IMG/VR virus record: IMGVR_UViG_3300037882_001770
Coordinates: 186,001-250,000 of that record
DNA length: 64,000 nucleotides
Reading direction: 5' to 3' (one strand)
Made by a program: the position numbers and the translations under genes. The notes below the pieces were generated by a model. That model was given only the letters and a program-made list of their open reading frames with translations. It ran no database searches and had not been told where the DNA came from. Positions 35,539 through 37,292 of the stretch are shown here, piece after piece. How positions within the stretch are numbered: the first letter of the stretch is position 1; each line of letters starts with the position of its first letter.

Positions 35539-35864
35539 CACATCAGTTTGTGGTCATGTGGGATTGCAATGGTCTTGAGTATGTGGGCGATATCACCGAG
35601 GAACAGGGCCGAAAAACCTGGGCCACACTCAAAGGTGAGGAATATCGCGGCATGCCCAATCTGTTACATCTACGACTCAGAGCACAAGCAAACTATCAAA
35701 GAAATTATGAGATTTATTTTGTGGATGCAGTCGAAGGAATTACCACGGAAGATATCTGTAGCATGTTTGAGGCTGATCCTCAAACCGCCGCCGAAACTGT
35801 TAGACGTTTGGGACAGGTGTTTTACAGTAACCGGATCGACATATCAGATCGGGTTATAGTATAA
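35535..35864 (+). CDS. conserved hypothetical phage protein
   Basis: MWDC.GLE; LRA.AN.QR.YEIY; F...PQ..A..VR..G. Confidence 0.75.
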   Translation: MTHQFVVMWDCNGLEYVGDITEEQGRKTWATLKGEEYRGMPNLLHLRLRAQANYQRNYEIYFVDAVEGITTEDICSMFEADPQTAAETVRRLGQVFYSNRIDISDRVIV

Positions 35865-35873
35865 GTTTTTCGA

Positions 35874-36095
35874 AGCTGAGTGATATCGGCTAGTGTGACC
35901 CGCACGATAAGTGAAATAATCAATCACGGGTGGTCCCAGTCTAACCTAACTGGCGCTGGCAATGCGTAACGGGCCCTGTAGTGAGCGGGTGAGGACTAGC
36001 TTGTTTCTCTGCTGAATCCGATGGGATAACCAGAGGCAACATAAACCGAATGTTGCAAAGTATAGGGTATAATTGACCGCCTGGGGCTGCAGAGC
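35874..36095 (+). ncRNA. candidate structured non-coding RNA, family unassigned
   Basis: GC-richer intergenic stretch with nested stems GCTAGT/ACTAGC, ACCCGC/GCGGGT, CCAGT/ACTGG, CTCTG/CAGAG, GCAACAT/ATGTTGC. Confidence 0.6.
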
Positions 36096-36112
36096 ATTGT
36101 GGTATGTAGAGG

Positions 36113-36141
36113 TTGACATTTCTTAAAGATTCCAGTATAAT
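36113..36141 (+). promoter_or_regulatory. consensus sigma70 promoter
   Basis: TTGACA-N17-TATAAT. Confidence 0.9.
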
Positions 36142-36227
36142 TGTCAAATGCTAGCCGATTTAAACTAAAGAAGTCGGCGGCTAGTTATTAACTGACAGTC
36201 TCAGGACTGCTATGAAAGGATGTAAAC

Positions 36228-37292
36228 ATGGTACAGCGTCTTACACGTAAACTTACCGATGTGGCCTCGGAAGTTGAAAAGCAAATCAAGGCCCACTACA
36301 ATATCACGCAAAAAATACTAGATAGTTTTCGTGAGCAAGCTCAAGCAAAACACACTCTAGGATATAACTTTCCTGAATCAAAAATGGTTGCCATTGATGA
36401 TCTCTGGATTGATTACGAAGTTCAACGAGATGTGCTACACAAACATATTATCAGTATTATGAAAAATTGGGATCCAAGAATTTGTAGCCCAGTTTCAGCT
36501 TGCAAACTAACAGACCGCGAGCGGTGCGATACATACGACGGCCAGCATCGAACCATCTCTGCGGCAATCCTAGGCTATACAGAAATCCCAGGTGCAGTAG
36601 TTCATACCAACGACCCAAACTTTGCCAGTCTAGCATTTGAACAACTCAACGACACAGGTGTCAAACGTTTGGGTCCAGGCGACTTGCATCGCAATGCCTT
36701 GGTGCGTTATAAAAATGGTAGTCACGAACTTCGCAATGTTCGTGCTCGCATCTTGCAAGATCAGTTTGATAACTTGCAAATTGACCTGCAAGACAAAGGT
36801 GCTAGGTCCAGCGATAACCTACGCGGCGATCACGACTACTTTTTTAGTCATTTTAAATATGCCTACAAGGCTATTGATATTGACGAATCCGGCAAGGTGT
36901 TGTGTGCTGTGTTGGATGCTATAAAAACAGTATTTCCTTTGCAGGAAGAAGTTGATCAAGGTGTGTTTATTGGCCTAGTTGAATTGCAACGATTAACCAA
37001 TACTAATCCACGTAATCAACTACCCACGGATTGGATGAAAACCTTGTTGGAATCTGTTAAATCTACTTTTAAAAGCAGTCATTTGATTCATGCCAAAGCA
37101 AAGATTCAATGGGAACACAGCCATCCAGGTGCAGGTTGGGTCGCTCCTACTGCTATGAGTAACTTCATGCGTGAGATTCATCTACGCAATGGTGGCAAAT
37201 TGAATCTTCCTTATCACGGTGAGGGTGCCAAGGTTGGTATTGTGGATGGTAATGTCGCTCCGGGACTATTTCCACAGGGAGCCGAACAATGA
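36228..37292 (+). CDS. ParB/Srx-like (DGQHR) domain protein
   Basis: L.IDYEVQRD, WDP....P, DGQHR..A..LG, A..F..LN...K.L. Confidence 0.8.
   Translation: MVQRLTRKLTDVASEVEKQIKAHYNITQKILDSFREQAQAKHTLGYNFPESKMVAIDDLWIDYEVQRDVLHKHIISIMKNWDPRICSPVSACKLTDRERCDTYDGQHRTISAAILGYTEIPGAVVHTNDPNFASLAFEQLNDTGVKRLGPGDLHRNALVRYKNGSHELRNVRARILQDQFDNLQIDLQDKGARSSDNLRGDHDYFFSHFKYAYKAIDIDESGKVLCAVLDAIKTVFPLQEEVDQGVFIGLVELQRLTNTNPRNQLPTDWMKTLLESVKSTFKSSHLIHAKAKIQWEHSHPGAGWVAPTAMSNFMREIHLRNGGKLNLPYHGEGAKVGIVDGNVAPGLFPQGAEQ

What the first reader, a model, noticed from the sequence alone, without database searches (positions are those of the whole stretch)
35874..36095. Multi-stem ncRNA candidate of about 220 nt
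Seen: in a genome of abutting genes, a GC-richer gap folds into a closed multibranch domain (GCTAGT 35889/ACTAGC 35995; ACCCGC 35898/GCGGGT 35985; GTGA/TCAC; GGTC/GGCC; CCAGT/ACTGG; CGC/GCG) followed by CTCTG/CAGAG and GCAACAT/ATGTTGC hairpins. It lacks tRNA and obvious ribozyme signatures. Inference: a functional RNA at the end of an early transcript, directly before the ParB/nuclease/methylase operon.
Basis: partly seen in the sequence, partly recalled or inferred. Interest (0 to 1): 0.7.

Follow-up and report, generated by a model that had tools for sequence, protein, structure and literature searches.

The report
New structured RNA from phage tRNA arrays
The gap holds a real gene of about 230 nt for a tightly knotted RNA, one member of a large family not found in Rfam 15 or in the searched literature, which uncultivated phages usually carry inside their tRNA gene arrays and whose function is unknown.

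Summary
The RNA is real, but the evidence for it is comparative. The single-sequence fold is not significant (z = -1.7). The window comes from a 317 kb jumbo-phage record. Window 35867-36097 (+) belongs to a family with more than 140 copies in viral and metagenome contigs. None was found in Rfam 15, in 50,697 named phages, or in 185,579 prokaryote genomes, apart from one 2 kb MAG scrap.

Covariation supports a 105-nt 5' core and a 3' arm:
- Core: five stems (P1, P2, P2a, P3, P4), two pseudoknots made by one GGGUGGU strand that pairs with two hairpin loops, and a P1/P2a kissing loop.
- Arm: P5/P5b/P6.
- Over 33 core pairs, 94.7% of cells pair against 75% in shuffles, and 27 pairs show compensatory changes.

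Its two long-range closing stems are not conserved.

67 of 88 distinct copies lie in phage tRNA arrays on the tRNA strand, and many exactly fill the gap between two tRNAs. The link to the downstream operon is incidental.

My best reading is a stable, trans-acting RNA cut out by tRNA-processing enzymes. This phage carries it as a stand-alone gene. Its biochemical role is unknown. The nearest analogues by genomic context are GOLLD and ROOL.

The parts
35867..36097 (+). Whole RNA gene, about 231 nt.
   Evidence: CM R1 matches 35867-35970 at 84.5 bits, E 1e-23, and this is the only hit in the 64 kb window. The HMM and alignments carry homology through to ..CAGAGCAU at 36090-36097. U-G pairs such as P2 pair 34-41 (UG in 70 of 93) fit only the + strand.
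35855..35860 (+). TATAGT, a -10-like box 6-8 nt before the RNA start. It overlaps the end of the upstream ORF. This is a putative own promoter (inferred).
   Evidence: CATAGT/TATAGT/TACAAT sits at the same place in the clade members L002, L003, L013, L030 and L048. L049 and L047 have canonical promoters at this distance. No transcript data are available.
35875..35890 (+). P1 hairpin: 35875-79 pairs with 35886-90. Loop GUGAUA is at 35880-85.
   Evidence: All 5 pairs show compensatory changes and 98.7% of cells pair. The MAFFT-only alignment gives 91.6%.
35893..35905 (+). P2 hairpin: 35893-96 pairs with 35902-05. The 5-nt loop GACCC is at 35897-901.
   Evidence: 99.7% of cells pair. Pair 31-44 is CG 45 / GC 43 / UA 3. 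Pair 33-42 is GC 58 / CG 29 / AU 5.
35898..35931 (+). Pseudoknot PK1: P2 loop ACCC (35898-901) pairs with GGGU (35928-31).
   Evidence: 98.4% of cells pair. C-G changes to U-A in 12 sequences and A-U to G-C in 5. L131 and L138 each carry a single compensatory change. PK1 was not part of the CM.
35911..35927 (+). The loop is at 35915-23.
   Evidence: All 4 pairs show compensatory changes and 94.6% of cells pair.
35881..35922 (+). Kissing loop: UGAU in the P1 loop (35881-84) pairs with AUCA in the P2a loop (35919-22).
   Evidence: The longest Watson-Crick run between cognate loops averages 3.42 against 2.42 +/- 0.08 when loops are swapped among sequences (0 of 2000 permutations reach it). At least 9 complementary types occur. 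The mutual-information scan picks out the same columns.
35932..35946 (+). Pseudoknot PK2: GGU (35932-34) pairs with ACC in the P3 loop (35944-46). With PK1, the strand GGGUGGU splints two hairpin loops together.
   Evidence: 95.5% of cells pair. The pair is almost invariant, but a subgroup changes both sides together (UUAC with GUAG in L134 and L112). Pair 80-155 is GC 81 / CG 7. This is the weakest of the tertiary pairs.
35936..35953 (+). The loop is CUAACCUA.
   Evidence: 98-100% of cells pair and every pair shows compensatory changes. Some relatives have a 30-60 nt insertion here.
35954..35966 (+). P4 hairpin CGC-UGGCAAU-GCG, with a near-invariant 7-nt loop.
   Evidence: 100% of cells pair. 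The third pair is CG 71 / UA 17.
35970..36092 (+). P5 long-range stem: 35970 and 35972-78 pair with 36082-88 and 36092. It closes the 3' arm.
   Evidence: 51 distinct helix variants occur. The cognate longest helix averages 6.93 against 5.40 +/- 0.11 when strands are swapped (0 of 2000). The closing pair is C-G 62 / U-A 26 / U-G 1. All 10 clade members pair at every position.
35985..36080 (+). P5b: GCGG (35985-88) pairs with CCGC (36077-80).
   Evidence: The second pair is C-G in 65 sequences and U-A in 19, with no exception among 84.
36007..36035 (+). P6a hairpin, specific to this clade: 36007-11 pairs with 36031-35 and 36016-19 with 36024-27. The internal loop CUGA / AAC is conserved.
   Evidence: Five sequence variants occur (CUCUG/CAGAG, UGUGG/CCACA, UCUUG/CAAGA, GGUCG/CGAC, UCCUG/CAGG). 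9-10 of 10 pair at each position.
36036..36056 (+). P6b hairpin, specific to this clade: GCAACAU (36036-42) pairs with AUGUUGC (36050-56).
   Evidence: Relatives have a hairpin of different sequence at the same place (L013 GCGACAC/GUGUUGC, L002 GUGCUGU/ACAGCAC, L030 GCGACACC/GGUGUUGC), read by eye. The MAFFT columns are out of register, so the column count is poor.
36093..36096 (+). Invariant single-stranded 3' tail AGCA.
   Evidence: GCA is invariant and the leading A is nearly so in A2. In arrays the next tRNA starts 2-10 nt later.

Best explanation
Window 35867-36097 (+) is a gene for a discrete, stable, trans-acting structured RNA of about 230 nt. It belongs to a large family not found in Rfam 15 or in the searched literature, carried by uncultivated tailed phages, many of them jumbo phages.

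The family's normal home is the inside of phage tRNA arrays. There the RNA is transcribed with the tRNAs and is set free by the host's tRNA-processing enzymes. RNase P, cutting at the 5' end of the next tRNA, would define its 3' side. Maturation of the preceding tRNA-CCA would define its 5' side.

In the window phage the gene sits alone. A -10-like box lies just upstream, and the promoter of the next gene lies just downstream.

The working part is the 105-nt 5' core, whose length is nearly constant. It has five stems held together by three tertiary helices: the strand GGGUGGU pairs with the loops of P2 and P3, and the loops of P1 and P2a kiss. A long, variable arm (P5-P5b-P6) is attached.

I take it to act in the infected cell on the tRNA/translation apparatus as a binding platform or decoy for a host or phage factor.

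Shown: the family, the fold, the strand, one copy per genome in the five jumbo-phage records searched, and the tRNA-array habit. Inferred: transcription, the processing route, action in trans, and the target.
For: Family size:
- 34 of 35 hits to a 19-nt core pattern are homologues.
- 46 more copies came from metagenome contigs.
- CM R1 gives exactly one hit per source in 96 sources (958 kb) and one per genome in five jumbo-phage records.

Fold:
- Searches give 95.3% and 94.7% of cells paired against 75-76% in shuffles and 27-43% in slid controls.
- 23 of 28 and 27 of 33 pairs have changes on both sides (0 of 500 shuffles reach this).
- The kissing loop, P5 and P5b are supported by cognate-versus-swapped tests. 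A blind mutual-information scan recovers the same helices.

Context:
- 67 of 88 loci hold tRNAs, and all 920 tRNAs are on the RNA's strand.
- 39 copies start right after an encoded CCA, 32 end 2-10 nt before the next tRNA, and 24 do both.
- Independent metagenome copies show the same pattern.
- tmRNA genes lie in the same clusters.

Stand-alone copies have promoters at the right distance, and one (L021) has an intrinsic terminator.

Relatives of the core occur in contigs of two freshwater/wetland metatranscriptomes.
Against: - There is no direct evidence that the window's copy is transcribed. No RNA run holds this phage, and DNA carry-over could explain the metatranscriptome contigs.
- No partner is known, and no protein gene travels with the RNA. 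The commonest neighbour families are in only 19-20 of 89 loci, at varying positions.
- Ro60 (TROVE) and RtcB are absent from five genomes that carry the RNA.
- The window genome has no tRNA gene, so the RNA's role cannot depend on neighbouring tRNAs. That assembly is only 89% complete, however.
- A compact core with many invariant unpaired bases would suit a ribozyme or a ligand binder just as well.
Confidence: 0.55

Rival explanations
1. It is a self-cleaving or processing ribozyme that helps mature the neighbouring tRNAs. This would resemble the HDV-like theta ribozymes that sit next to phage tRNAs.
For: - Many copies begin exactly after tRNA-CCA.
- The core is double-pseudoknotted, has many invariant unpaired bases, and is almost constant in length at 103-110 nt. 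That is typical of ribozymes.
- Peripheral insertions carry tetraloop-like hairpins.
- There is a precedent in PMC10879173.
Against: - Stand-alone copies keep the same 5' leader GAACGU directly behind a promoter, so no 5' cut is needed.
- The distance to the next tRNA varies from 2 to 10 nt.
- The window genome has the RNA but no tRNA.
- No Rfam ribozyme model matches at E<=10.
- The order of strands does not fit the HDV fold.
Confidence: 0.12
2. It is an RNA-only assembly. The P1/P2a loop pairing would be between molecules, building rings or cages as in phi29 pRNA, or as in ROOL and GOLLD.
For: - It shares its genomic habit with ROOL and GOLLD, which are phage-borne and lie near tRNA islands (PMC12286853; PMC5737381).
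- The loop-loop complementarity covaries, and covariation cannot tell pairing within a molecule from pairing between molecules.
Against: - The two loops are only about 30 nt apart across a pseudoknot, so a kiss within one molecule is sterically plausible.
- The RNA is 3-4 times smaller than ROOL or GOLLD.
- No test was possible, because complex prediction refuses RNA-only jobs.
Confidence: 0.12
3. It is a ligand-binding aptamer. It would act either as a riboswitch for what lies downstream or as a highly expressed sponge for a small signalling molecule.
For: - The fold has the complexity of an aptamer.
- A divergent subclass (L022, L023, L049) lies shortly before ORFs, one of them IscU-like by eye.
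Against: - There is no conserved expression platform.
- What follows the RNA varies: a tRNA, a promoter, a terminator or unrelated ORFs.
- In the window the next gene's promoter lies after the RNA.
- No Rfam riboswitch model matches.
Confidence: 0.08
4. It is not an RNA gene. It would be a DNA-level element, a small protein gene, or a chance fold.
For: - The single-sequence fold is only z = -1.7.
- Minus-strand ORFs of 57-68 aa overlap the region.
Against: - Compensatory changes are strand-specific and include many G-U pairs.
- Indels of 1-2 nt run through the region.
- There is one copy per genome in five records, and the element stays conserved when the flanks are unrelated.
Confidence: 0.02

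Closest known systems
GOLLD and ROOL RNAs (large ornate phage and prophage RNAs)
   Same: They are carried by phages, often lie beside or inside tRNA islands, are probably co-transcribed with tRNAs, have several pseudoknots and kissing loops, and have no known function (PMC12286853, PMC5737381).
   Different: They are about 580-800 nt, against 200-270 nt here. No sequence or structure match was found, since the Rfam models do not hit at E<=10. GOLLD and ROOL occur in cultured bacteria and prophages. This family was found only in uncultivated virus and metagenome contigs.
Theta (HDV-like) ribozymes next to phage tRNAs
   Same: They are structured RNAs that abut phage tRNA genes and have a pseudoknotted core (PMC10879173).
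   Different: From my own knowledge, theta ribozymes are small, about 60-70 nt. Here the strand order does not fit the HDV fold, no Rfam model matches, and stand-alone copies lie behind promoters.
Small stable RNAs of phage T4 (species 1 and 2, rnaC/rnaD) in the T4 tRNA cluster (from my own knowledge, not tested here as a family)
   Same: They are non-tRNA stable RNAs encoded within a phage tRNA cluster and matured with the tRNAs. Their function is still unknown.
   Different: They are about 120-140 nt. blastn of three family members against 50,697 named phage records found nothing.
tmRNA
   Same: It lies in the same phage clusters. A permuted beta-type tmRNA sits next to the array in G001 and is present in the window's own genome. 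It is a stable RNA tied to translation.
   Different: This RNA has no tRNA-like domain and no tag reading frame. ARAGORN and the Rfam tmRNA models do not match it.
T-box leader and the RNase P specificity domain (RNAs that bind tRNA)
   Same: There are superficial string resemblances: GGGUGG...ACCGCC, GGGUGGAAGG and CAGAGCA. Two conserved strands also flank a hairpin (P5b, joint, P6, joint), as J11/12, P12 and J12/13 do in RNase P. This is recalled from memory.
   Different: The strings pair differently here, since GCGG/CCGC forms P5b with perfect covariation. The Rfam T-box and RNase P models do not match. The RNA is not in a 5' UTR.

Membership tests
Any Rfam 15 family (4227 models) | A covariance-model match at the family's gathering score, or at least a weak match that recurs at the same place in several members | tested here: not met
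   There were no hits in the window at gathering score and none at E<=10 over 35700-36400. At E<=5 on 12 other members, only tRNA, tmRNA and chance hits appeared, with nothing on the RNA itself.
tRNA / tmRNA | A cloverleaf or tRNA-like domain that ARAGORN can detect | tested here: not met
   ARAGORN finds none in the window. In arrays, both flanking tRNAs are complete, so the RNA is not a tRNA intron.
GOLLD / ROOL | A match to the family covariance model, and a size of about 580-800 nt | tested here: not met
   No Rfam match was found. Family members are about 170-270 nt long. Only the genomic habit is shared.
HDV-like / theta self-cleaving ribozymes | A nested double pseudoknot with strand order P1-P2-P3-P3'-P1'-P4-P4'-P2', and cleavage at its own 5' end | tested here: not met
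   The strand order deduced here is: P1 hairpin, P2 hairpin, P2a hairpin, PK1 3' strand, PK2 5' strand, P3, P4, P5 arm. No Rfam HDV-type hit was found. Cleavage itself cannot be tested with these tools.
Riboswitch / cis-regulatory leader | A position in the 5' UTR of a recurring gene class, with an expression platform (terminator or RBS-sequestering helix) | tested here: not met
   The downstream element varies between tRNA, promoter, terminator and unrelated ORFs. The window's downstream gene has its own promoter after the RNA. 12 of 15 homologous operons lack the RNA.
Bacterial Y RNA (partner of Ro60/Rsr) | A Ro60 (TROVE) gene in the same genome, and a match to the YrlA model | tested here: not met
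   TROVE is absent from five genomes that carry the RNA, three of them at least 99% complete. The controls gave positive hits. YrlA matched only flanking tRNAs, weakly.
New family defined here (tRNA-array-associated phage RNA) | A full-length match to CM R1, plus P5/P5b and the AGCA tail | tested here: met
   The window scores 84.5 bits at E 1e-23 over model positions 1-107. P5, P5b and the AGCA tail are present.

The most novel reading that the evidence does not exclude
The family is a new functional class of RNA, with a biochemical activity of its own, that phages deploy together with their tRNAs. Three forms are possible:
- A tRNA-binding module. The two conserved strands flanking P6, GUGGAAG and UAUAAUUA, each contain a T-loop-like pentamer (UGGAA, UAUAA). 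They could form an elbow-docking platform as in RNase P and the T-box. This is my speculation and is untested.
- A new ribozyme.
- An RNA decoy or sponge that counters host defences aimed at tRNAs or based on signalling nucleotides.
Probability: 0.25. Interest if true: 0.92.

Novelty: categorically new. Interest (0 to 1): 0.78.

Why it matters
Few complex, widespread RNA folds remain unclassified, and those that do (OLE, GOLLD, ROOL, raiA) have each opened new biology. This one has several features that make it worth pursuing:
- It is compact, with a 105-nt core, so it is tractable for probing, crystallography and cryo-EM.
- It is heavily knotted and rich in invariant unpaired bases.
- It is abundant in freshwater, wetland and wastewater viromes.
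- It is tied to phage tRNA arrays and tmRNA genes, and why phages carry those arrays is still debated.

It would be a third, much smaller, tRNA-island RNA of phages. That makes the question 'what do these passenger RNAs do?' testable with a small molecule. It also shows that gaps inside tRNA arrays are a productive place to look for new RNAs.

One caveat applies. It may already be one of 8,495 unnamed candidates in a 2023 IMG/VR survey (PMC10690425). Those lists could not be checked.

Tried and rejected
- The single-sequence fold as evidence is not significant.
- Rfam was searched at gathering score and at E<=10 or E<=5 on the window and on 12 relatives, with no result.
- blastn of three members against named phages found nothing, apart from a chance 24-nt hit in a Serratia phage.
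- The pattern scan of 185,579 prokaryote genomes gave 3 chance hits and one real hit on a 2 kb MAG contig.
I used a 5'-domain model and tested the 3' arm with my own scripts.
- Transcript evidence: no run holds this phage well (best DNA share 0.19), and no RNA run was listed for an abundant relative. Read laying found only relatives of the core in two metatranscriptomes.
- The search for a conserved neighbouring protein found none. The top families look like ordinary phage accessory genes by eye: YkuK-like, metallophosphoesterase, GroES, MazG.
- The Ro60/Y-RNA and RtcB ideas failed, since both proteins are absent.
- Specific flanking tRNA identity: there is none.
- Resemblances to T-box, RNase P, SRP, ZTP and ykkC strings were recalled from memory and dropped. 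The pairings differ and no model matches.
- Literature searches found no description of this RNA. The supplements of PMC10690425 are not held.

Full report
**Where the window lies.** The window is bases 186001-250000 of a 317,493-base IMG/VR virus record that is linear and estimated 89% complete. The finding lies in a 363-nt gap, 35865-36227. An ORF of 109 aa ends at 35864 and an ORF of 354 aa starts at 36228, both on the + strand. The gap is GC-richer than its surroundings, 0.49-0.51 against about 0.37-0.45. A perfect TTGACA-17-TATAAT promoter at 36113-36141 serves the downstream gene. The candidate therefore ends before that promoter.

**Checking the observation.**
- All the quoted strings are present, with ACTAGC starting at 35994 rather than 35995.
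- The fold of the single sequence is not convincing. MFE is -73.5 kcal/mol, z = -1.70, and 10 of 200 shuffles fold as well. The minus strand gives z = -0.6.
- ARAGORN finds no tRNA in the window.
- Rfam 15 gives nothing at gathering score and nothing at E<=10 over 35700-36400.

From the sequence alone the claim would stay open.

**Relatives.** The 354-aa protein has 15 relatives in viral contigs. Only three of them (L002, L003, L013) have the long upstream gap, and there the gap is homologous to the window's. The other twelve have short gaps and no such sequence.

Three pattern scans extended the family:
- A 19-nt core pattern (CTAGTNTGAYCCGSACGAT) hit 35 viral contigs, and 34 of them share homology over the whole element.
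An nhmmer profile confirmed about 110 loci and 88 distinct full-length copies.
Of the 80 loci fetched, 46 are full members by covariance model.

The family was not found outside uncultivated material:
- Three blastn searches of 50,697 named phage records found nothing.
- The core pattern in 185,579 prokaryote genomes gave three chance hits and one real hit, on a 2 kb contig of a Bacteroidota MAG.

Covariance model R1, built from the 5' domain, finds exactly one copy in each place searched:
- the window, at 35867-35970 (84.5 bits, E 1e-23);
- each of five jumbo-phage records;
- each of 96 sources totalling 958 kb.

**The fold.** The 5' domain is almost constant in length. It is 103-110 nt in 72 of 87 distinct sequences, and the rest carry an insertion in P3.

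On a plain MAFFT alignment of 86 distinct sequences, 28 proposed pairs behave as follows:
- 95.3% of cells pair, against 75.8 +/- 0.6% when partners are shuffled (0 of 500 shuffles reach this) and 27-43% when partners are slid by 1-3 columns.
- 23 pairs have changes on both sides.
- The covariation score is 0.504 against 0.167.

On the model-fitted alignment of 93 distinct sequences, with the pseudoknots and kissing loop added (these were not in the model), the figures are similar:
- 33 pairs, with 94.7% of cells paired against 75.1% in shuffles.
- 27 pairs with changes on both sides.
- A covariation score of 0.519 against 0.173.

The elements, in window coordinates, are:

| Element | 5' side | 3' side | Note |
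|---|---|---|---|
| P1 | 35875-79 | 35886-90 | |
| P2 | 35893-96 | 35902-05 | 5-nt loop GACCC |
| PK1 | 35898-901 (loop ACCC) | 35928-31 (GGGU) | pseudoknot |
| P2a | 35911-14 | 35924-27 | |
| PK2 | 35932-34 (GGU) | 35944-46 (ACC in the P3 loop) | pseudoknot |
| P3 | 35936-40 | 35949-53 | |
| P4 | 35954-56 | 35964-66 | near-invariant loop UGGCAAU |

One continuous strand, GGGUGGU, therefore splints the loops of two hairpins together.

The loops of P1 and P2a are complementary in at least nine different ways. Examples are AUCA/UGAU, UGUC/GACA, GUCA/UGAC, UAGC/GCUA, AACG/CGUU, UAAU/AUUA and UCAU/AUGA. The window has the swapped form, UGAU/AUCA. The cognate complementarity averages 3.42 pairs against 2.42 +/- 0.08 after swapping loops among sequences (0 of 2000).

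The 3' arm is closed by P5 (35970 and 35972-78 with 36082-88 and 36092).
- P5 has 51 different helix variants.
- Its cognate longest helix averages 6.93 against 5.40 +/- 0.11 when strands are swapped (0 of 2000).
- P5b (35985-88 with 36077-80) follows. Its second pair is C-G in 65 sequences and U-A in 19, with no exception.

A blind mutual-information scan recovers the same helices. It also finds the closing pair of P5 (C-G 62, U-A 26, U-G 1) and the base of P6.

The distal part, P6, varies between clades. In the window's clade it is two hairpins, 36007-35 and 36036-56. Both are kept through different sequences in relatives.

The many U-G pairs fit only the + strand.

Its two long-range closing stems, and GGTC/GGCC, are not. 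Relatives break them, and their strands are taken by PK1, P1/P2 and P5b.

**Genomic habit.**
- Of 88 distinct copies, 67 lie in loci with tRNA genes.
- All 920 of those tRNAs are on the RNA's strand.
- 39 copies begin directly after the encoded CCA of a tRNA, reading ..CCA|GAACGU..
- 32 copies end 2-10 nt before the next tRNA, and 24 do both.
- The flanking tRNAs are of no particular identity.
- Independently sampled metagenome copies show the same pattern, including contigs of 266-371 kb and one of 785 kb.
- tmRNA genes lie in the same clusters.

G001 is a 99%-complete, 344 kb relative of the window phage that also has the 354-aa gene. It carries its single copy of the RNA about 120 kb from that gene, directly after a tRNA-Gly and near a permuted tmRNA.

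The window genome itself has no tRNA gene that ARAGORN can find. It does have a permuted betaproteobacterial-type tmRNA near its end (RF01850, 112 bits). That points to a betaproteobacterial host.

In the window's clade the RNA stands alone.
- A -10-like box (TATAGT at 35855-60, or CATAGT/TACAAT in relatives) lies 6-8 nt before the start.
- Other stand-alone members have canonical promoters at that distance: L049 has TTGACA-16-TATAGT and L047 has TATAAT.
- L021 has an intrinsic terminator.

The mature 5' end therefore seems to be the same whether it is made by a promoter or by tRNA processing.

**What it is not.**
- It is not a leader of the downstream operon, as set out above.
- It is not protein-coding. 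Indels of 1-2 nt run through it and the covariation is strand-specific.
- It is not tied to any protein gene. The commonest neighbour families occur in 19-20 of 89 loci, at varying positions.
- It is not a Y RNA or a companion of RtcB. TROVE and RtcB are absent from five genomes that carry the RNA, and the controls were positive.
- The flanking ORFs of the window have no Pfam, PHROG or NCBIfam match. The names 'ParB/nuclease/methylase' therefore rest only on a DGQHR-like string seen by eye in the 354-aa protein.

**Expression.**
- No public run holds this phage well. The best DNA share is 0.19.
- No RNA run was listed for an abundant relative.
- Laying four runs on the region showed contigs from two freshwater/wetland metatranscriptomes that match only the conserved core (35924-35966). 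Their flanks read like other family members.

This fits expression of the family, but DNA carry-over cannot be excluded.

**Mechanism.**
- Shown: a large family, a covariation-supported knotted fold, the coding strand, one copy per genome in the five records searched, and residence in tRNA arrays.
- Inferred:
  - The RNA is co-transcribed with tRNAs.
  - Host tRNA-processing enzymes free it, with RNase P at the next tRNA's 5' end.
  - It is stable and acts in trans.
- My commitment: it works on the tRNA/translation apparatus as a binding platform or decoy, at about 0.55 for the trans-acting reading as a whole.
- Rivals:
  - a ribozyme that processes neighbouring tRNAs (0.12);
  - an RNA-only multimer built through the loop-loop pairing (0.12);
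  - a ligand aptamer (0.08);
  - not an RNA gene at all (0.02).

**Comparison and novelty.** By genomic context the nearest known RNAs are GOLLD and ROOL. Both are phage-borne and lie near tRNA islands, and their function is unknown (PMC12286853, PMC5737381). They are three to four times larger and unrelated by model. Theta ribozymes also abut phage tRNAs (PMC10879173), but they are small and of a different fold.

Searches of the held literature found no description of this RNA. A 2023 survey lists 8,495 unnamed IMG/VR candidates (PMC10690425). Its tables are not held, so overlap cannot be excluded.

I rate the element a new RNA class. The habit of riding in tRNA arrays has precedents, but the fold and the family have none that I could find.

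Noticed in passing
window 36113-36227: A perfect sigma-70 promoter (TTGACA-17-TATAAT, 36113-36141) is followed by a structured 5' UTR of the 354-aa gene. The hairpin CUAGCCGA...UCGGCGGCUAG (about 36151-36185) changes to CCAA...UUGG in L002 and L003, which is compensatory. A second hairpin, CAGUC-UCAG-GACUG, follows.
   Followed up: partly
own genome outside the window: G000:C1 about 314180-314550 (L178:1181-1550): A permuted (two-piece) betaproteobacterial-type tmRNA is present (RF01850 at 112 bits, RF04321 at 118 bits), although ARAGORN finds no tRNA gene in the 317 kb record. This suggests a betaproteobacterial host. The relative G001 has the same kind of tmRNA next to its tRNA array (L174:209-622).
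   Followed up: partly
window 36228-37292: The 354-aa protein contains a DGQHR-like string (..YDGQHRTISAAILGY..), as in ParB/DndB-type proteins. Even so, it has no Pfam, PHROG or NCBIfam match. It has 15 relatives at 67-90% identity in viral contigs.
   Followed up: partly
L022:6804-6910, L023:3662-3768, L049:4986-5093 (all minus strand): A divergent subclass matches the full 5'-domain model at 42-74 bits. Its P3 and P4 are altered (loop UGGCAAG or UGGUAAG), and it lies behind canonical promoters and shortly before ORFs. The ORF after L049 reads MAYSDKVLDHYENPRNV, which looks IscU/NifU-like by eye.
   Followed up: no
L192 (metagenome contig JACCDU010716148.1, 785,472 bases): A full member of the family (109 bits) sits in a tRNA array on a 785 kb contig. 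That is very large for a phage, so it could be a megaphage or a cellular contig with a prophage.
   Followed up: no
family members of the L040 type, P6 region (for example L040:6420-6500): A conserved symmetric internal loop, GUGAUG / UUGAUG (possible tandem G-A pairs), lies in P6. The two strands flanking P6 are also conserved (GUGGAAG and CUAUAAUUA). The latter contains TATAAT, so it could double as a -10 box for the downstream tRNAs.
   Followed up: no
window 35924-35966, runs X23 and X24: Contigs of two freshwater/wetland metatranscriptomes hold relatives of the RNA's conserved core (assembler depth 3-7). Their flanks are typical of other family members.
   Followed up: partly
loci with tRNA arrays (for example L028, L036, L042, L205): These uncultivated phages carry 20-26 tRNA genes in tight same-strand arrays with spacers of 1-10 nt. 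Other gaps of 200-700 nt in the arrays were not examined and may hold further RNAs. By eye, genes for a YkuK-like protein, a metallophosphoesterase, GroES and a small MazG-like protein recur within or beside the arrays.
   Followed up: no
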